A DNA stretch of 63,537 nt, counting the filler, from Dicyema japonicum (Eukaryota > Animalia > Dicyemida): the NCBI GenBank assembly GCA_011109175.1. It is 9 parts of 9 records of this genome, joined end to end, with 100 filler letters (N's around TTAATTAATTAA, not from the genome) between each part and the next. Parts side by side here need not be neighbours in the genome. Positions count along the whole stretch, not along the records: positions 1 to 13,537 come from RDEW01000028.1; 8 more parts are not named here. One strand, given 5' to 3'. The notes beneath the pieces are model-generated. The model was not told the origin of the DNA, did not search any database, and worked only from the letters and a program-made list of their open reading frames with translations. Position numbers and translations under genes: made by a program. Shown piece after piece: positions 1-12,641 of this stretch (its first letter is position 1; every line of letters starts with the position of its first letter).

Positions 1-698
1 TGGAAATCATTTGGACTCCTACTGGAATCGCCCAATCAGCACCGACGCGCTTGTTTGCTTTCGGGGGCTTCCCCTGAGAGCGGAGCTTGGCTAAACGCCA
101 TCCCAAATGGAGCTCTGGGCATCTTTGTTGATAATGAATGCGTTAGAAGTGGTATCTCTTTGCGGCTGGGACTGAAAGTATGTGTACCTCACCCGTGCCG
201 ATGTGGCATCCTGATAGACTGCTATGGCCTGCAAGAAGAGCTCTGGCAGATCTCCAAGGCACAAGGCTCTGAATGAGATTGTCAAGCGGGTTATGGATGC
301 TGCTGGATACTCGGCCATTCTTAAACCGGTCGGGTTATGCAGAAGTGACGAGAAACGACCGGACGGGATGACCATATTTCCTTTTGAGCCCGAGAAACCA
401 CTTGTTTGGGACGTGACATGTACAGACACGTTCGCCCCGAACAATCTCTACGAGTGCGCTTCAAGGGCTTGCTCTGCAGCCGTAAAAGCGGAGAAGGACA
501 AACTCGAAAAATACGTCGACCTTCCCGATAATGTCAAATTTGTTCCCCTTGCTATGGAGTTTCGGACGTATCGGAAACCGGATCACCTCATGCACTGAAA
601 TTCTCCGTGAACGACGCTGGTTATTTGAGCGAATTTCGCTCGAAATTATGAGAGGGAACAGCCAGACAACGGTTGATAGTGCTTGTACTTACGGATAA
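1..698 (+). mobile_element. CRE-clade-like non-LTR retrotransposon, 3' part (zinc knuckle + restriction-like endonuclease), degenerate
   Basis: Translations give GAWLNAIP..RSGISLRLG..PHPCRCG..GRSPRHKALNEIVKR..KRPDGMTIFPF..LVWDVTCTDT and, after frameshifts, RRWLFERISLEIMRGNS..*. This is the C-terminal RLE signature (RPDG..WD.TC) of CRE-type elements. Confidence 0.85.
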
Positions 699-2190: not shown

Positions 2191-2382
2191 AACTTATATC
2201 ATTATCCTTGCCTACTAATCATTTATGTGATGATCAATTATTATTTTTTTCTTAACTCACTTCGCGAAATTATCCGCTACTTTTTGAACTTATATCATTA
2301 TCCTTGCCTACTAATCATTTATGTGATGATCAATTATTATTTTTTTCTTAACTCACTTCGCGAAATTATCCGCTACTTTTTG
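2191..2382. repeat. Exact 96-bp tandem duplication
   Basis: 2191-2286 is repeated at 2287-2382. Confidence 0.9.
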
Positions 2383-3340: not shown

Positions 3341-4031
3341 TAATTACTATTTAGCAGAGATTTTAATCCCCCACGTGTCACTTTTTTAAAACAGCTTTTG
3401 TTTCGCCACTAACATAAGCTTCTAAATGATTAGTTTTTGTTTCTCCACTTTTATTAAGCTGGTCAAATTTCCTGTTGTAGAGTATTGAGGGGAAAAACAA
3501 TATACTAATTTGAAATTACAGCAGTGACACTATTCCATTGAAATAGAATCAAATAACACATTCGTACGTCATTCCAAAACAGATTTCCTTAAGATAAAGG
3601 ATTATGGTTGATTAAAGCTAATTTAAACGGTATGACAAGTCTAATGGATTGTGTGTGGATTTAAGTTAGTTTAGTTAATACACGTCCTCGTTGCCAGTAA
3701 ACAGTTTATGGTTTTGCTTGTGCCATGTTTTCGCCTATTTTTGTCGCTGGTCGACTTGCTCGCCTACTGATTTCGTCCAGATCATCTGCATCCATCAATC
3801 GGCTCCCAATCACAACATAACCTCCACAAGTGTCCTGGGAAGACAACCTCGGCGTGGATTTAAAGACTATCAATATTTAGTAAAAATTCTATGTATTGTC
3901 TAGAATCTAAAAAATAGTGTTTTGAATAGTATAAATATATAAATAATTAATAAATATATTTAATTAAAATAAATAATATTGGTTAACCAGAAAAGTAATA
4001 AAATGGTATAAACTAAACATAATTATATATT

Positions 4032-6674
4032 ATGACATCATACAACGAAGATTGGTTAATCCAAATATTAGAGGAGTACAAAATAAGCAAGAATGCCACC
4101 TGTGAGGAAATTGTGAAAGCCCTTCAGGAAAATCTGAATGAAATAAAAAAGAAGCTGACGTCTGAATACAGCACAAATGAAAAGAGTGATGGTATTTTTG
4201 GGCTGAAAAAGTCCCTTAAAAGGAGAAATAATGTAATTGAGCAATTAAAATATGAAATGGACAAAATAGATGATTACATAATAATAATCGAGGGAAGACT
4301 GGAAGTTGATTTGTGCATTAAACGTACATTACAGTCTGATCTGGTAGAGCATAGGGGGAAAAACATAATGCAGCTCATCGAAGACCATAGTCAGAGAATC
4401 AGCAATCGTTTGAAGTCACAACTGAAAGTATCAATATAATAATTTCAGGCAAAAGAAGGACTACTGAACATGTTTGATCATCTTAAGGACAAAAAATCAC
4501 AGGAAGAGATGAAACAACTGTTAGAAAATGTGACCTCAAAAATTGAAGTGCTCAGAATCCAAAAGAAGATATTGGAGAACCACATGGGTTGAGATGGGCC
4601 ATAACTAAAGACAGTCAGGATCTCCTAAACAAGGATGAATACAGGTTTTACGTGCTCAGTCATCACCTCCGCATCGAAGAGAGAATCTTCACAGGGGCTA
4701 CTCGAGCTCTTGAGGTTATCAAAAACTCAAATAAAAAAAGTCTTGATATTGTAACCTGTCTGTTTTATTAGAGGTTAATGATAGTCTAAAAAAATGTGCT
4801 CAGAAACTCAACTTATTGAAGATATCTGTTAATAAACTGAAACTCAAGATAAATTGTGACGAACATGTTAACTTTGAAAACCTATTCAGTAAGGCATTCC
4901 GATTAACGGGGACACTTTTCATAAAGTTCACGTTTTAATGACTTTCAGCATTAAAAGAGTCTACTGTTTGCTAAGTTGTTCATTTTGTCAAGAGCTAATT
5001 CTGAAGTCATCAGGAGTTCAGTCTTCTAAGCTTACCCCTAAGAAGGAAACCAAACCAAGTCATGAGTTATTTGAGTTTAGAATCAGTCCACGTGGCTTTG
5101 TGGGTTGATGGAAAAGAGGTAGGTCGTACACCCTCAGTAATCCCGTCAGAATCATGTTTTAATGAGAAAATCCAAATACGTGTCAATAATGTATGATCAC
5201 TTTTCATGTAAGGCTAGGGAGATTGAGTTACAAGTGTGCTACACAGAAGCGGATGTAACGTGTGGACTTGTCTACATGCCACTGGAGAACTTTATTAATG
5301 AGAAGATTACAAAGGTACCTCATCTAGAGCCTCGGGGGAATATAGAAGCCAATGTCTGTTTCTGTTTTAGTCGCAGATTCGGTTTTTAAACCCTCTTCTG
5401 TCCAAAAAGTGCAACTTGGACAGGAAAAAGGCGATTCGAAAGGGACTGAGATTGAGAGGACCATTTGGAGTCAGCTTTCAGCTTAAAGACGAACAGAATC
5501 GTAAAAGTGATTCATTCCCGAAGGACTCAAGAAGTAGTGAAGTTCTAACCATGGACAATTACACAATAACTGCTCTATTGGGGAAGGGTAGTTTCGGAAA
5601 AGTATTGGTGTTGTTTATGGAGGTGTTTCTGTGTTGTGAAAAGTCAAGTGATAAACTATATGCCATGAAATGCCAGAAAAAAAAAGATTTCCTCGCCAAA
5701 AATGATATTGATACCCTCAGATCTGAGTTGAGTGTGTTGAGGATGGGACGAAACAACCAATTTATAATACATTTGTACTCTTCCTTTCACACACTGGTGT
5801 ATGCCTGGGGTTAACTTAGAACCACGTGTTCTTCATGTTGGAGTTTGCTTCAGGAGGGGACTTGATGACACTCATTCAATGCAAGAGGTTCTCATACAGA
5901 CAAACACAGTTTTATATAACCTGTGTTTGCCTGGGACTTAAATTTTTGCACGAAAACGATGTGATGTACAGGTTTCCGTGGTTTTCTCATTTCAGAGATT
6001 TAAAACTCGACAATTTAATGTTATGTGAGGACGGTTACGTTAAGATCACCGACTTTGGACTGTGTAAAATCAACATCCCCTATGGAGTCTATACTTCCAC
6101 TTTCTGTGGGACTCCTGAATTTATTGCCCCCGAGATGTTAAATAGGATTAGTTACTCCCGTTCGGTAGATTGGTGGCAGATTGGAGTTCTCTTGTTCGAA
6201 ATGACAATAAAAGAGGTAGTCCTCATGGTTAGTATAGCCTCCATTTTTGGGAGATGACGACGAGGAAACATTCCATGCCATTCTAAATGATCCTCTGATA
6301 ATCCCCGACAATACGGAAAAAAACGTGCAGGACCTTATCATCAAACTGTTGAGGAAACAGCCATCGACTCGTCTGGGGAACTCTCAGGAGGACGCTAAAG
6401 ATGTTTTAAGACATCCGTACTTTGAGGTGATTATTATCCGATCATGCTAGTCCATAAATATTGAGACTATCATTAGCAAGGAGTTCAGACCTCCCTTCAT
6501 CCCGATAAAAGTTTATTTGTGAATTTTATGTTGCAGAATTCTATATCAAACATCTCCAACTTTGATAAAGTGTTCACCTCCGTGAAACCCACACTATCGA
6601 TCCCCCCAGGAAAACTGAGTGAAGAAGATCAGAGCCTGTTCGAAGAGTTCAACCTTGATTCCCTATTAACTTAA
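4032..6674 (+). CDS. PKN: Protein kinase N (PKN/PRK; 3 HR1 repeats, C2-like domain, AGC kinase), about 781 aa, 14 exons
   Basis: Splicing 13 GT-AG introns (4428-4448, 4588-4610, 4751-4773, 4926-4948, 5059-5080, 5191-5212, 5354-5376, 5602-5622, 5797-5819, 5972-5995, 6216-6237, 6427-6450, 6511-6536) gives one open frame ending at TAA 6672-6674. Motifs: HR1 (QLKAKEGLLNM; HHLRIEERIFTGA), C2 (AREIEL..LEPRG..FLNP), GKGSFGKV, YRDLKLDN, DFG, TSTFCGTPEF, NFD tail. The intron 3 boundary is ambiguous. Confidence 0.9.
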
Positions 6675-6736: not shown

Positions 6737-7559
6737 TTAATCACGTGTCTCAAACACTAATGGAGCTATGTAAGGGGAATGACGGATTCCAAAGCTGAAT
6801 TCTGGGGCTGCAGTCTTAACAGTATTTAACTATAAAAATAATATATTACTACTTTGTTTGGATAGTAGGTTGAGGGGCTTGGTATCTGGGTGGCATCCAT
6901 TGGGGGGAGGTTACGACTTATTAAACTATATACAGGTGCCTTCCGTTTGTAAATATTACTATCCGTTGAATTGTATGTCCCTGGTCCAGGACTCTAAACA
7001 TGCCAATTCAAGTTACTCTATGTTGGCTGTTGTCTCCCGTTATTCTTGATCCCAATGAGTAGCATGGAGCTTGTTTATACTTACTTTCGAAGCATTTTCC
7101 AAGGACAGAATTCAGTTTGTATGAATTTGAAGCTAAATTAACTTGTATAGTCAAACCCGGGTTAGAATTCCCTTTCCTATCCATTTTCCTGATCCCAAAT
7201 GAGTGAGCTGGAGATTTGTGGTACAAAATGTTGTTTATTTCAAAGGAATAGGCATTTGGTGCCGGAGTCTTATAAAGGGTCAAATCCTTCATTCGCGAAT
7301 ATAGCGAAAATTTAAATCCCTCTTTCTTTCCCATATTTGTAACTTCAGGTTTAGGGTAATAGCAGGGGCCAGGACTGTACACTGAGTCACATTTTTTCGT
7401 TCTCTCCCCGAAACTGTAGCAAGGCCCCTTTGAGTAGTTACTTCTTATGTCATGTTTGGTGGAACCGATTAGGGAAGGTAATTGATATTTTGGTCCCGGA
7501 CTGGGATACATAGCAGCAATAGGGCCACGGGGCACAGTTGTGTGATAACTTTCCGCCAT
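6737..7559 (-). CDS. ODF3: Outer dense fiber protein 3 / SHIPPO1 (CIMAP1) family, sperm-tail PG-rich repeat ciliary protein, 4 exons
   Basis: Reads PRGPIAAMYPSPGPKY, repeated SPGP..Y / P.YS motifs, and C-terminal APEFSFGIRHSPYIAPLV. Introns at 7133-7156, 6994-7016 and 6830-6852 restore the frame to TAA at 6737-6739. Confidence 0.9.
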
Positions 7560-8544: not shown

Positions 8545-9620
8545 TTTTAATTTTTTAGTGTAATGGTCTTTTGTAATATTTGGTGACGATTCCATCCCAG
8601 GTTAAAACAACGGGGATAATTGTAACTTTCGCTTCGTGCAATAAAGCCAGTTCGCTTGCTAAAAGATCATACTTGTGGAATTTTTTAATTTCAACATTTT
8701 TCAAATTTTGTTGTGAAGTGAGTCCAACTTCAATTAGTGTTATCTTTCTCCTTAATTTGTCCATTACGAAAATGTCTGGTTTATTGTTCATAATCTTTGT
8801 ATCAGTAGTTATAGTTGAGTCAACTCTGATCTCAACAGCTTCATTAGCCACTACAGATTGGACCGAATGGTTCTTCAATTTCTTCGACTGGTTGATTCCG
8901 AATTGGCGACACAGATGCAGATGAATACATTTTATTACTTCATTGTGTCTCTTCAAATAATCACTGTTAAGCATTCGTCCGCATCTGGTTGCCAGATGAT
9001 CAACTGATTTCTTTGCAGAGTGGCAGTGACTGCAACTTGCTCCACCAGTTTCAAAAAACAAATTACGGTCTTGAACCAAACACAATGTTCCTTCCGAGCG
9101 TGGAGAATTGTTCCCGTGCATTAACCATGTGGAGAATTCCGTAATGTCCGTATCTGTTTCTTGGAAGCATTCAAAGAGAGTTGAATGCAAAGACTTCCTT
9201 TTTATTTGTTCAATTAGGTATTCATTTTGTAATCCTATAATTTTAACATTTAGGCTCTCTGGTTGTTTGTTCCATTTGTAATAATTTTAACCGAGTTAGG
9301 AATTCTATGATTGTGACCATATGTGTTTTTTTATTTAATGACCAGTAGAATTCCTGCTTTTTTTGAACACCAATAGGATTTTTTTTCCAGATCCCTGAGA
9401 AACTGAAAAAGCATACGTTCGCTCTTATGGGTTATAGAGACCAATCCTCTTCCTAGTCTGTTCCTTGGCATATAAAGTATTTCTTTATTAGAAGGTTTCA
9501 GATGAATTCGATGACTTGTAAGTATCCCGCGTATTTTTTTTATCAATGTTCTCGAATTCGTTCTGGAAGTAAGATCTATGTCTGTCCCAAAAAACACACA
9601 TGTTATTCCAGTGGCCATGG
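8545..9620 (-). mobile_element. R4-like (RLE-clade) non-LTR retrotransposon, 3' part: RT thumb, CCHC knuckle, RLE endonuclease
   Basis: Reads HLKPSNKEILYMPRNRLGRGL; C-x2-C..HLATRC..RHNE..KPDIFVMD..LIEVG..KYDLLA. An A-rich tail follows near 8545. Confidence 0.88.
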
Positions 9621-10560: not shown

Positions 10561-10861
10561 AGATCCTAATCCGAAGGAATAGTGGAGGAGGCCTGATCTA
10601 ACGTGATCAGGAGAAACCCCAATCCAAATTTGTCGGGATCACTTTGTTTTTTTCGGTTTAACTGTAAAGATTTTACAATCATTGTTTTCCCTTATTGCTT
10701 TAAAAATTCATGAATCTTTTCTCAGGGAATGTAGCACTATTGATTTATAAAATCATTGAGGTCTCTCGGGGATCTCAGGAGATCTTTCAAGAAACGCCGA
10801 AAACACGATTCAAAAAATGAAGATTTGAATTTATTATGCTATTAAATTATTAGTTTGTTAA

Positions 10862-12641
10862 TTAAAATTTTTTGGCTTGCAAATTATCGTCTGATAAAAA
10901 CTAATTTTACAAAATTGTACCGCCATGCTAATTATAGGAATCGTAGACGTTGTGGCAGTACCAGTAGTCGTTGAAGGATTTGTTGAAGGATTCGTAGAAG
11001 TTGTGGTAGTAGTTGTCGAGGGAATTCTTCTTGAAATCGTAGATGTCGTTGTAGTAGTTGTTGAAGGATTTGTAGAAGTTGAAATAGTAGTTGTCGAGGG
11101 AATTCTTCTTGGAGTCGTAGATGTCGTGGTAGTAGTTGTTGCAGGATTTGTAGAAGTTGTGGTAGTAGTTGTCGAGGGAATTCTTCTAGGACTCGTAGAT
11201 GTCGTGGTTGGAGGAGTTTTCTTGAATGTAAAAATAAAATACCGTTTTGCATATTAGAGCGATTTCTACGCTGGCTAGCATAGAACATGTGTTAGAAATA
11301 TATATAAAGTTGACAAGACCAGGACTAAGTGAAATACAGGTAATACGTTTTAGCTAGACAACTCACCAAGGTATAACCAATAGGACAACTCCCGGTAACG
11401 TATTTTGATGATGTCGAGGCAGGTCTAAAGTATTTGGTAATTACATAGTATTTTGGGACAGGAAGACAGGTGATATAATTCTAAAATGAACAAAATAAAC
11501 TAACATAAGAATTTCTGTTACTCTTACAGTATCCTCTATAGTAGAGAGGATTCGAGTTGATGGCAAAGCAGTTTTCCATAACATAACCACTGGGACATCT
11601 CTGAGGAGTTTTTGATATCTTGGGAATAGTTTTTGGGACTTAATTACAACCAATAATACGTATTGCGATCCCGAGGACGGTTATTCTCCTAAGTCGTGCC
11701 TTGATTTGACAATTTTTGTGTAATGACATAAGAATAACGTAAAATTTAGTGGGGTGAGCCCTAAAGATGATTTCCAAATAAGCCTGGTATATATCGAGCA
11801 TCCAACGATGAAGGAATCGTATTTTTTGGTAGCCAACTCCTTCTGATTAAATAGTCTCCCCATGACCTGCGTATTGAGTGTACATTCGGCATAAAGCAGC
11901 TTAAATTTATAATTTTACCATATATGTTCTACTAACAGTTCTATATAGTCCATTACACGTGTTTCCAGAGACGTAAGATGATATGCGCATTTTATGTCTG
12001 GGAATTCTGCAAACCCCAATAATATAGTTTGGTGGACAGGTTATCTTTATCCTTAATTTCCTCGATTTCTCCAGTTTTCTATATTTAGCGTTTTCTTAAG
12101 TTTGGGTAACACACGTACTCCGACAAGTGACCTCGAATGTGACAGCATATGAGTTTTTTTTTTGTGTTAATTTGCAGCTATCACTTTTCATTGAAACCGT
12201 ATATTTATCATATGAACTCAACCTTCCCTTACATTAAGGAAACCAACCAGCTGTGAATCCTACAATCTGTGACCACGGATCCAACAGGACACGTGAGTAT
12301 TCCATTTTTGGCAATTTTTCTATATACAGTTACCACGTAATCAGCTATGGGCACACACGTGGCGATAGCCTATTGGATATTAGATACTTTACCTTAGTTT
12401 TTCCTATTCCATTGCTTCTTACTTGGCATAAGTTTCCTTGGACGTATGATCCGTAGGAGTAAGACTTATGGTTAGGACGACAGCTATTAATGTGGGAGTT
12501 CAATGGACAAAATGCTGTCGATATGTCGCCCCTAGTTCGTACCAGTCTCCCATATATAGTTAAATGAGCATCGCAAACTAATTTATGCTTAACATTACTT
12601 GAGAAAAGTAAGGAATGTACTATAACTCCTATCATTATCAT
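10862..12641 (-). CDS. Putative secreted protein: signal peptide + six PCSK9-CHRD/resistin-like Cys modules + Thr-rich mucin tail
   Basis: Signal-like MIMIGVIVHSLLFSICDA. Modules start CPLNSHINSC, CPVGSVVTDC, CPPNYIIGVC, (K)KYDSFIVGC, CPSGYVMENC, CPIGYTLVSC. Introns at 12578-12598, 12370-12392, 12223-12247, 12095-12118, 11900-11918, 11761-11783 (GC-AG), 11639-11659, 11481-11504, 11325-11346, 11221-11242 link them in frame to RRIPSTTTTTTSTNP repeats. Splicing around module 4 and at the last exon is uncertain. Confidence 0.7.
10985..11215 (-). repeat. 78-bp (26-aa) coding tandem repeat, about 3 copies, Thr/Ser/Pro-rich
   Basis: The anchor gtcgagggaattcttct recurs at 11015, 11093 and 11171. Confidence 0.9.

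What the first reader, a model, noticed from the sequence alone, without database searches (positions are those of the whole stretch)
10862..12641. Hidden secreted protein built from six PCSK9-CHRD/resistin-like modules plus a mucin tail, with no protease domain
Seen: after removing about 10 micro-introns the minus strand encodes a signal peptide and six repeats of C-x8-C-x(13-22)-C-x(11-17)-C, e.g. STAFCPLNSHINSC..YGSYVQGNLCQVRSNGIGKTKAIATC and CPIGYTLVSC..NTC..ALIC, then 26-aa Thr-rich repeats and no clear TM segment. Known: PCSK9 C-terminal modules read like VACEEGWTLTGC..GAYAVDNTCVVRS..AVAICC, have C1-C6, C2-C5, C3-C4 disulfides, and three modules form one pseudo-threefold CHRD. Inference: these modules keep C2-C5 and C3-C4 and lack the C1-C6 pair, and 6 = 2 x 3 modules suggests a tandem double-CHRD receptor-binding head on a glycosylated tail, without a subtilisin domain. 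In a parasite this is a candidate adhesin or host-receptor ligand. I do not recognise this architecture, and the ORF track shows only shadows of it.
Basis: partly seen in the sequence, partly recalled or inferred. Interest (0 to 1): 0.85.

Follow-up and report, generated by a model that had tools for sequence, protein, structure and literature searches.

The report
Secreted PCSK9-tail-like repeat protein gene
A gene split by about ten tiny (19-25 base) introns in a probable dicyemid parasite encodes a likely secreted protein made of five to six copies of the cysteine-rich module found in the tail of the cholesterol regulator PCSK9, followed by a threonine-rich mucin-like stalk; its function and its transcription are not shown.

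Summary
The observation largely holds. On the minus strand, 12641 to 10858, removing 9-10 GT-AG micro-introns gives a stop-free reading frame of about 526 codons. A neighbouring kinase gene shows that this genome has 21-26 nt introns. The product has a hydrophobic N-terminus, five clear four-cysteine modules, one degenerate fourth module, and a tail of 26-residue Thr-rich repeats with no membrane segment.

The PCSK9 idea passes a blind test. A profile made only from window exon pieces, searched against 1.84 billion proteins, gave four hits. Three carry PCSK9 C-terminal (CHRD) modules, and one of them matches Pfam PCSK9_C3 at 7e-34.

An independent CHRD profile scores the spliced head at 34 bits, against a maximum of 11 bits in 4,000 shuffles. 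A profile-profile comparison gives 96% probability. The four cysteines align with PCSK9 Cys2, 3, 4 and 5; the Cys1-Cys6 pair is absent.

Several claims are not supported:
- All modules resemble CHRD module 3, so no "2 x 3" pattern appears.
- No sequence match to resistin was found.
- No RNA evidence could be obtained, and the spliced protein could not be folded.
- The adhesin role is conjecture.

Protease-less CHRD arrays already exist unnamed in databases, so this is a divergent variant of a known domain, not a new fold.

The parts
12393..12641 (-). Exon 1. It holds the start codon, a hydrophobic signal-peptide-like N-terminus (codons 1-16) and module 1 from Cys1 to 11 residues past Cys3.
   Evidence: Open frame. 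Hydropathy. BLASTP to P0003 gives 41% identity over 44 residues, E 4e-4.
12370..12392 (-). Intron 1, 23 nt, GT-AG.
   Evidence: Removing it joins the last strand and Cys4 of module 1 in frame. The module score rises from 12.9 to 20.3 bits.
12248..12369 (-). Exon 2. It holds Cys4 of module 1, the linker, and Cys1-Cys2 of module 2.
12223..12247 (-). Intron 2, 25 nt, GT-AG. A 16-nt alternative lies at 12228-12243.
   Evidence: The 25-nt choice scores 16.1 bits for module 2 against 12.6 bits for the 16-nt choice. It also fits the 21-26 nt intron range of the neighbouring gene.
12119..12222 (-). Exon 3. It holds Cys3-Cys4 of module 2.
12095..12118 (-). Intron 3, 24 nt, GT-AG. It contains an in-frame stop.
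11919..12094 (-). Exon 4. It holds the linker and module 3 from Cys1 to past Cys3.
   Evidence: fragment E 0.0032.
11900..11918 (-). Intron 4, 19 nt, GT-AG. A 37-nt alternative lies at 11900-11936.
   Evidence: Both choices score 12.9 bits, so the boundary is undecided.
11660..11899 (-). Uncertain region. It holds Cys4 of module 3 and then the degenerate module 4, which keeps only the Cys2 and Cys3 equivalents. The best-scoring path uses a GC-AG intron at 11761-11783. An optional in-frame 24-nt intron lies at 11843-11866.
   Evidence: There are 114 GT-AG paths and 1,384 when GC-AG is allowed. None restores Cys1 or Cys4, and the best score is 3.5 bits. Module 4 scores 5.7 bits.
11639..11659 (-). 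Putative intron 7, 21 nt, GT-AG. It contains an in-frame stop at 11642-11640, immediately after a Cys4-like strand.
   Evidence: The other DNA sample reads TGA here, which is also a stop.
11505..11638 (-). Exon 7. It holds the linker and module 5 from Cys1 to Cys3.
   Evidence: fragment E 0.0056.
11481..11504 (-). Intron 8, 24 nt, GT-AG. It ends in an in-frame stop.
11347..11480 (-). Exon 8. It holds Cys4 of module 5, the linker, and Cys1-Cys2 of module 6.
   Evidence: fragment E 0.0017.
11325..11346 (-). Intron 9, 22 nt, GT-AG.
11243..11324 (-). Exon 9. It holds Cys3-Cys4 of module 6.
11221..11242 (-). Intron 10, 22 nt, GT-AG.
10858..11220 (-). Last exon. It holds the Thr/Ser/Pro-rich tail (26-residue repeats; the tandem array spans 10980-11208), a short C-terminus and the stop at 10860-10858.
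10830..10835 (-). AATAAA hexamer 23 nt downstream of the stop, a possible polyadenylation signal.
   Evidence: Read directly. It could be chance in AT-rich DNA.

Best explanation
This is a single-copy protein-coding gene of an animal with ultra-short introns, most likely a dicyemid. After removal of 9-10 introns of 19-25 nt it encodes a protein of about 525 residues with three parts.
1. A signal-peptide-like N-terminus.
2. [quoted passage not shown]
3. A mucin-like stalk of about 93 residues, built from 26-residue Thr-rich repeats, with no membrane anchor.

Each intact module keeps four cysteines that align with PCSK9 Cys2, 3, 4 and 5. By analogy with PCSK9 these would form two nested disulfides (Cys2-Cys5 and Cys3-Cys4) that hold a small beta-sandwich. 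The third PCSK9 disulfide, Cys1-Cys6, is absent.

Shown: the open spliced frame, the module repeats, homology to CHRD modules, and the tail composition.

Inferred: secretion, the fold and disulfide pairing, O-glycosylation of the tail, and the role. The likely role is a secreted or surface-associated binding protein that displays an array of CHRD-type protein-binding modules on an extended glycosylated stalk.
For: Micro-introns of 21-26 nt are proven in the neighbouring kinase gene. They agree with published data: animal introns under 30 bp are known only from myxobolid myxozoans and Dicyema japonicum (PMC13644364).

The spliced frame is stop-free over 526 codons.

A profile made from six exon pieces was searched against 1.84 billion representative proteins and gave four hits. 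Three of them carry PCSK9_C matches in Pfam:
- P0003: PCSK9_C3 at 7e-34 and PCSK9_C1 at 1.5e-29. It also matches the solved PCSK9 CHRD at 5.6e-7.
- P0004: 32.1 bits against a cut-off of 31.3.
- P0001: 24.4 bits, below the cut-off.

P0003's own homologues are genuine PCSK9 proteins from fish, mammals and amphioxus.

A CHRD profile was built without any protein picked by the window's own profile. It scores the spliced head at 34.0 bits, E 1.4e-12 for a single target. The maximum was 11.3 bits in 2,000 shuffles that keep the cysteines in place, and 10.4 bits in 2,000 full shuffles.

hhalign of the five modules against the module-3 alignment gives 96.4% probability, E 1.1e-9, over 48 columns from Cys1 to Cys4.

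Splicing completes the modules in register.

The cysteines align with PCSK9 Cys2-Cys5. The spacing matches the published CHRD motif and pairing (PMC9113161).

Against a second DNA sample, the head carries 12 substitutions (5 synonymous, 7 non-synonymous). None creates a stop, shifts the frame, changes a cysteine or alters a splice dinucleotide of the model.

Read depth equals that of the flanks, so the gene is single-copy.
Against: No transcript evidence exists. The only runs found are unspliced and DNA-like, and no RNA run was listed.

The module 4 region has no unique splice solution. The best path needs a GC-AG intron and a 21-nt intron that removes an in-frame stop. The gene could therefore be broken or truncated there.

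Pfam's own PCSK9_C models did not hit any single exon piece at E up to 10. Neither exon 1 nor the exon-piece profile hit PCSK9 among solved structures.

One of the four database hits, P0002, is a repeat-driven false positive. E-values for repetitive targets are therefore inflated.

The signal peptide is judged from hydropathy alone. No structure was predicted for this protein.
Confidence: 0.7

Rival explanations
1. This is a decaying or truncated gene. It was once a six-module CHRD-array gene, and module 4 has since been damaged, losing Cys1 and gaining an in-frame stop after its Cys4 strand. The locus now yields a three-module product at most, or nothing.
For: An in-frame TAA lies at 11642-11640, directly between a Cys4-like strand and the conserved start of the next linker. 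The other DNA sample has TGA there. No canonical splice path restores module 4. The ratio of non-synonymous to synonymous differences (7:5) shows only weak constraint.
Against: Modules 5 and 6 and the tail remain open and well formed downstream, with correct GT-AG micro-introns. A 21-nt GT-AG segment removes the stop exactly. It also removes Cys4, whose partner Cys1 is already missing, so no unpaired cysteine remains. No frameshift or new stop appears between the two samples.
Confidence: 0.17
2. The locus holds two adjacent genes rather than one. The first would carry the signal peptide and modules 1-3. The second would carry modules 5-6 and the mucin tail.
For: The middle 240 nt (11660-11899) has no secure coding path.
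Against: The second half has no start codon followed by a signal-like segment upstream of module 5. The modules are evenly spaced, collinear and on one strand. A degenerate module still scores 5.7 bits in the gap.
Confidence: 0.06
3. The modules are an unrelated cysteine-rich repeat, or a chance assembly made by choosing introns, and the likeness to PCSK9 is a cysteine-pattern coincidence.
For: Per-module scores are low at 12-20 bits. Pfam models gave no hits on exon pieces. Many stop-free paths can be built when introns are this short.
Against: Shuffles that keep every cysteine in place reach at most 11.3 bits, against 34.0 for the real sequence. hhalign gives 96.4% probability, specific to module type 3, against 4.5% for type 1 and 0.2% for type 2. 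In a blind search of 1.84 billion proteins, three of the four hits were CHRD-module proteins. The signal is confined to this locus and strand.
Confidence: 0.04

Closest known systems
[quoted passage not shown]
   Same: The modules are about 50-70 residues with the same core cysteine spacing (C-x8-C, then a longer loop, C, then C). They share conserved features around the first two cysteines and before the third, and the last strand is hydrophobic. Homology is significant by profile and by profile-profile comparison. The spacing between modules, 20-26 residues from Cys4 to the next Cys1, is close to the 25 residues seen in a whale PCSK9.
   Different: There is no subtilisin or prodomain. Each module has four cysteines rather than six, because the Cys1-Cys6 pair and the terminal CC doublet are missing. 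All copies are of the M3 type, with no M1-type or His-rich M2-type module. There are five to six copies instead of three, and a mucin-like tail is added. Pfam models did not reach significance on single exon pieces.
Unnamed protease-less double-CHRD proteins P0003 (environmental contig) and P0005 (identical to a marine protist transcript), and the 320-residue Saccoglossus kowalevskii 'PCSK9-like' protein P0008
   Same: These are secreted-looking proteins made only of CHRD modules. P0003 and P0005 each carry six modules, seen as two complete CHRD matches. Module 1 of the window protein is 41% identical to a P0003 module over 44 residues.
   Different: These proteins keep all six cysteines per module and a clear a-b-c-a-b-c module order. 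They have no Thr-rich tail. P0003 ends in a hydrophobic segment that the window protein lacks.
Unnamed module arrays P0001, P0004 and P0040-P0042 (environmental long contigs)
   Same: They score highest with the window's five-module profile, at 41-69 bits. They have signal peptides. Their 'a' modules have the same four-cysteine pattern with a single terminal cysteine. They are tandem arrays without a protease.
   Different: Their modules alternate in a two-module period, giving 4, 6, 8 or about 14 copies. The 'b' modules carry extra cysteines. They have no mucin tail.
Resistin / RELM family (Pfam PF06954)
   Same: Published work reports that the PCSK9 CHRD modules resemble the resistin head structurally (Hampton et al. 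2007, as cited in PMC9113161). From my own knowledge, untested here, resistin also has a C-P-x-G-aromatic ... C stretch with eight residues between the cysteines.
   Different: No sequence match was found at any threshold. The N-terminal coiled-coil tail is absent, and so is the dense ten-to-eleven cysteine pattern. Resistin heads trimerise from three chains, not from tandem repeats in one chain.
Mucin-type stalk regions of secreted and surface glycoproteins
   Same: The tail consists of tandem Pro/Thr/Ser-rich repeats, 79% Thr+Ser+Pro over 93 residues.
   Different: The tail is short, with about 3.5 repeats. Glycosylation is not shown, and no anchor or further domains follow.

Membership tests
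PCSK9 C-terminal CHRD module family (Pfam PCSK9_C1/C2/C3) | Significant profile similarity to family members | tested here: met
   An independent family profile scores 34.0 bits against a shuffle maximum of 11.3. hhalign gives 96.4% probability, E 1.1e-9. The blind search returned family members.
PCSK9 C-terminal CHRD module family (Pfam PCSK9_C1/C2/C3) | Score above Pfam's own gathering cut-off | tested here: inconclusive
   Only single exon pieces could be submitted, because every module is split by an intron. None matched at E up to 10. The spliced protein has no reference and was not submitted.
PCSK9 C-terminal CHRD module family (Pfam PCSK9_C1/C2/C3) | Core cysteine framework Cys2-x8/9-Cys3-x18-25-Cys4-x11-23-Cys5 (PMC9113161) | tested here: met
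   Five of six modules have C-x8-C-x13-20-C-x11-17-C, aligned column for column with PCSK9. Module 4 keeps only the two inner cysteines.
PCSK9 C-terminal CHRD module family (Pfam PCSK9_C1/C2/C3) | Third disulfide Cys1-Cys6 (an N-terminal cysteine plus the terminal CC doublet) | tested here: not met
   No module has the CC doublet or the upstream cysteine. Four-cysteine variants also occur in P0001 and P0004.
PCSK9 C-terminal CHRD module family (Pfam PCSK9_C1/C2/C3) | Three different modules (M1, His-rich M2, M3) packed into one pseudo-threefold domain | tested here: inconclusive
   All six modules score best as M3 type and show no a-b-c periodicity, whereas the P0003 control does. One profile aligned modules 1-3 collinearly to a whole CHRD at 25.3 bits, but that profile included proteins selected by the window itself. 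Packing needs a structure model, which could not be made.
PCSK9 C-terminal CHRD module family (Pfam PCSK9_C1/C2/C3) | Beta-sandwich fold of each module | not tested
   The spliced sequence has no reference, so structure prediction and fold search were left out.
PCSK9 / proprotein convertases | Peptidase S8 catalytic domain with an inhibitor I9 prodomain | tested here: not met
   No such domain appears in the gene's exons. No other long open frame adjoins the gene.
Resistin / RELM (PF06954) | Sequence match to the resistin family, an N-terminal coiled coil and a ten-to-eleven cysteine head | tested here: not met
   No Pfam or solved-structure match was found. Even the well-conserved relative P0003 matches only PCSK9 among solved structures, not resistin.
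Mucin-like O-glycosylated stalk | Tandem Pro/Thr/Ser-rich repeats | tested here: met
   The repeat period is 78 nt with 2.9 copies and 91% matches. Composition is 51% Thr, 16% Ser and 12% Pro.
Mucin-like O-glycosylated stalk | Actual O-glycosylation | not testable with these tools
   This needs biochemistry or a dedicated predictor.
Secreted proteins | Cleavable N-terminal signal peptide and no membrane anchor | tested here: inconclusive
   Hydropathy of the first 11-residue windows is 2.3-2.45. No 19-residue window exceeds 1.54. No signal-peptide or GPI predictor was available.

The most novel reading that the evidence does not exclude
The head folds into two pseudo-threefold, resistin/CHRD-like assemblies (modules 1-3 and 4-6) held on a glycosylated stalk. 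The parasite would use it as an adhesin or ligand for a receptor on its host's epithelium. That would make it the first functional example of a PCSK9-type binding domain working without a protease in a host-parasite interface. In addition, two of its micro-introns (11639-11659 and 11481-11504) would be recently intronised coding segments that each still encode a Cys4-like strand followed by a stop.
Probability: 0.12. Interest if true: 0.7.

Novelty: new variant of a known kind. Interest (0 to 1): 0.5.

Why it matters
The PCSK9 C-terminal domain is medically important, yet its binding partners and evolutionary origin are poorly understood. It is usually discussed as a vertebrate appendage to a protease.

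This locus and the relatives found while testing it show the module as a free-standing, repeatable building block of secreted proteins. The relatives come from protists, a hemichordate and molluscs. In this parasite the module keeps only two disulfides and is combined with a mucin stalk.

Three uses follow:
- It gives a minimal natural version of the module for structure-function work.
- It is a candidate surface or secreted binding protein in a little-studied parasite with very few genes.
- It is a worked example of how genes with 19-25 nt introns escape open-reading-frame scans.

Tried and rejected
- Pfam scan of nine exon or frame pieces gave nothing except a chance 'CC domain' match at E 0.07.
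- ESM Atlas look-up of exon 1 gave a best score of 0.73 and no named family, so it was uninformative.
- A word-indexed protein search with exon 1 found no candidates. The length filter (46-145 residues) excludes full-length relatives.
- Solved-structure searches with exon 1 and with the exon-piece profile gave only chance GPR55 hits at E 0.8-8. Neither PCSK9 nor resistin appeared.
- MAFFT alignments that included the Cys3-Cys4 exon pieces misaligned them. The search profile (A5) therefore omits exon 3. It also uses one contiguous frame whose last five residues lie in what I model as intron 8.
- Read laying: the four runs are DNA-like, so they gave no splice evidence. A second run search restricted to RNA libraries listed none.
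- Rfam found nothing in the piece.
- An attempt to join two references in one call is not supported.
- Hit P0002 was rejected as a false positive. It looks like a translated tandem DNA repeat that matches only the C-x8-C stretch ten times.
- The 16-nt version of intron 2 was set aside in favour of the 25-nt version.
- The idea that module order mirrors M1-M2-M3 twice was rejected on module-type scores.
Full report
**What is in the sequence**

The 13.5 kb piece is animal DNA of about 36% G+C. It carries three recognisable features besides the target gene:
- a PKN/PKC-like kinase gene on the plus strand;
- a gene for a sperm-tail PG-rich (SHIPPO) repeat protein at 7008-7559 on the minus strand;
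- several unassigned open frames.

Aligning the kinase open frames to solved kinases shows insertions of exactly 7 and 8 residues and frame changes. Each corresponds to a GT-AG intron, of 21, 23, 24, 22, 24 and 26 nt.

Among animals, introns this short are reported only for myxobolid myxozoans and Dicyema japonicum, with splice signals reduced to GTa...AG (PMC13644364). Three observations point to a dicyemid: the ciliary-type SHIPPO gene, the G+C content (36.7% in D. japonicum) and the repeat-rich context (PMC6736024). This is an inference, because the organism's name is hidden.

**The gene model**

On the minus strand, an ATG at 12641 opens a frame with a hydrophobic start. Removing GT-AG segments of 23, 25, 24, 19, 21, 24, 22 and 22 nt, plus one GC-AG segment of 23 nt, gives a stop-free frame of 526 codons ending at 10858.

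Confidence in the introns differs:
- Eight are secure in position or nearly so.
- Intron 2 could be 16 or 25 nt. The 25-nt version scores better, 16.1 against 12.6 bits.
- Intron 4 could be 19 or 37 nt, and the scores do not separate them.
- The stretch 11660-11899 cannot be resolved. It allows 114 stop-free GT-AG paths, or 1,384 if GC-AG is allowed, and none restores a complete module.

An AATAAA hexamer lies 23 nt after the stop.

**The product**

- Residues 1-16 are hydrophobic, with windows of 2.3-2.45.
- Five modules follow with the pattern C-x8-C-x13-20-C-x11-17-C.
- Three of the linkers begin with (V/L)P, and two of these continue with an aromatic, beta-strand-like stretch.
- The fourth unit keeps only the two inner cysteines.
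- The tail has 93 residues with 51% Thr, 16% Ser and 12% Pro. It is built from a 78-nt (26-residue) repeat with 2.9 copies at 91% identity.
- No window reaches membrane-segment hydropathy.

**Is it more than chance?**

Four lines of evidence say so:
- The pattern CP-x7-C occurs five times in all six frames of the piece, and every one is in this gene.
- A PCSK9 module profile built from unrelated proteins was scanned over all 590 stop-free fragments. It picks five minus-strand fragments between 11328 and 12641 (E 0.0017-0.033), and nothing else scores below E 1.
- Removing intron 1 brings the missing last strand and fourth cysteine of module 1 into frame, and raises its score from 12.9 to 20.3 bits.
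- Against a second DNA sample, the head shows 12 substitutions (5 synonymous, 7 non-synonymous). None creates a stop, shifts the frame or changes a cysteine, and read depth equals that of the flanks.

**What the modules are**

Direct searches with single exons failed: Pfam, solved structures, the word-indexed search and the Atlas. Every module is interrupted by an intron, and pieces of 27-83 residues carry little signal.

I then aligned six exon pieces by reference (A5) and searched the profile against 1.84 billion representative proteins. Four proteins passed E 0.001:
- P0002 is a false positive, a translated tandem repeat that matches only the C-x8-C stretch.
- P0003, P0004 and P0001 all carry PCSK9 C-terminal modules.

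The Pfam and structure matches of these three are:
- P0003 matches Pfam PCSK9_C3 at 7e-34 and PCSK9_C1 at 1.5e-29. It matches the solved PCSK9 CHRD at 5.6e-7 over a full three-module alignment.
- P0004 reaches 32.1 bits against a cut-off of 31.3.
- P0001 reaches 24.4 bits, below the cut-off.

The family is a minute fraction of the library. The result is therefore strong corroboration, whatever inflation repeats add to the E-values.

Exon 1 aligns to a P0003 module at 41% identity over 44 residues, in register across three cysteines.

**An independent test**

P0003's homologues include genuine PCSK9 from amphioxus, fish and mammals. They also include a protease-less Saccoglossus "PCSK9-like" protein, mollusc xylanases with a CHRD, and foraminiferal and marine-protist proteins.

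I built a CHRD profile from these proteins only, leaving out everything the window's own profile had selected. It scores the spliced head at 34.0 bits, E 1.4e-12 for one target. The maximum was 11.3 bits among 2,000 shuffles that keep every cysteine in place, and 10.4 bits among 2,000 full shuffles. The reversed sequence scores -0.5 bits.

Profile-profile comparison of the five intact modules with the module-3 alignment gives 96.4% probability, E 1.1e-9, over 48 columns from the first to the fourth cysteine. The module-1 and module-2 alignments give 4.5% and 0.2%.

In the reverse direction, the window's five-module profile scores true vertebrate PCSK9 proteins at 13-15 bits in a single domain.

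**Cysteine framework**

In a joint alignment with a whale PCSK9, which has the same length as the human protein, the four cysteines fall on the second, third, fourth and fifth cysteines of each CHRD module. The first cysteine and the second C of the terminal CC doublet have no counterpart.

Published structures pair Cys1-Cys6, Cys2-Cys5 and Cys3-Cys4, with the motif C-x17-19-C-x8-9-C-x18-25-C-x11-23-C (PMC9113161). The pairing itself is inferred.

The degenerate fourth module lacks exactly the outer pair. Its first cysteine is replaced by Lys. Its Cys4-like strand lies inside the 21-nt segment that must be spliced out, because that segment ends in a stop. This is consistent with outer-to-outer pairing and with that segment being a real intron. 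It is equally what a damaged module would look like.

**What is not supported**

- **The 2 x 3 arrangement.** Module-type profiles give every module its best score as type 3 (20.3, 16.1, 12.9, 5.7, 12.2 and 15.3 bits), with no a-b-c repeat. The control P0003 shows a clean a-b-c-a-b-c pattern. The proteins that score highest with the window's profile (P0001, P0004, P0040-42) have 4, 6, 8 or about 14 modules in a two-module period, so arrays need not come in threes. A whole-CHRD profile did align modules 1-3 collinearly (25.3 bits), but it contained window-selected proteins. The question needs a structure model.
- **Resistin.** No sequence relation to resistin was detected.
- **Novelty of the architecture.** Protease-less CHRD proteins are not new to databases. 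P0003 and P0005 each carry two complete CHRDs, and Saccoglossus P0008 carries one.
- **Transcription.** There is no RNA evidence. The four runs holding the locus are colinear and unspliced, and none was listed among RNA libraries.

**How it probably works**

In PCSK9 the CHRD is a protein-binding platform. Its reported partners include CAP1 on M1/M3 and MHC-I on M2, and the domain is structurally like the resistin trimer (PMC9113161).

A signal-peptide-like start, an array of such modules and a Thr-rich stalk is the usual layout of an extracellular binding protein whose head is held away from a surface or gel by a stiff O-glycosylated region.

I therefore rate a secreted or surface-associated binding protein as the most likely function. 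The target is unknown. The host-adhesin idea is possible for a parasite that lives attached to host epithelium, but nothing here tests it.

**Verdict**

This is a real-looking, single-copy, intron-riddled gene for a divergent member of the PCSK9-CHRD module family with a reduced disulfide set and a mucin tail. Confidence is about 0.7 that it is an intact expressed gene of this kind. About 0.17 goes to it being broken in the middle, and the rest to other readings.

It is a new variant of a known domain family rather than a new kind of protein. Interest is moderate, at 0.5.

Noticed in passing
window 4030-6650 (+): A PKN/PKC-like AGC kinase gene. The kinase domain aligns to PKN1/PKN2 at E 3.6e-41. 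It is interrupted by GT-AG introns of 21, 23, 24, 22, 24 and 26 nt, which makes it a useful calibration set for splice signals in this genome.
   Followed up: partly
window 7008-7559 (-): A 183-codon open frame with sperm-tail PG-rich (SHIPPO) repeats, Pfam E 8e-12. It is a cilium- or flagellum-associated protein type, which argues for a ciliated host organism such as a dicyemid rather than a myxozoan.
   Followed up: partly
window 10626-10662: A short element with read depth about 10-15 times that of the flanks (409 against 30). Many contigs end or diverge here, so it is probably a high-copy dispersed repeat just downstream of the gene.
   Followed up: no
window 2191-2382: A perfect tandem duplication of a 96-nt unit (2.0 copies, 100% identity) in an AT-rich region.
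   Followed up: no
window 11481-11504 and 11639-11659 (-): Two putative micro-introns each encode, in frame, a Cys4-like strand (four or five residues ending in Cys) followed within two codons by a stop. They look like former coding sequence turned into introns, or the reverse.
   Followed up: partly
window 12573-12575 (-), codon 23: A lone cysteine lies 21 residues before the first cysteine of module 1. This is roughly where PCSK9 modules have their Cys1, but the partner (the second C of a CC doublet) is absent. It may be unpaired, or it may form an intermolecular bond.
   Followed up: no
window 55-600 (+), 8555-9190 (-), 9331-9618 (-): Open frames of 95-211 codons with no Pfam match. They may be remnants of mobile elements, since the published dicyemid genome is 49% repeats.
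   Followed up: partly
P0001, P0004, P0040-P0042; loci L002 and L003: An uncharacterised family of secreted proteins from long environmental contigs, built from 4 to about 14 alternating CHRD-type modules. One sits next to a Kringle-domain gene. It shows that CHRD modules form tandem arrays outside PCSK9.
   Followed up: partly
P0013, P0017, P0020, P0023 (molluscs): Glycoside hydrolase family 10 xylanases of gastropods carry a C-terminal PCSK9-type CHRD. I did not look for this domain combination in the literature.
   Followed up: no
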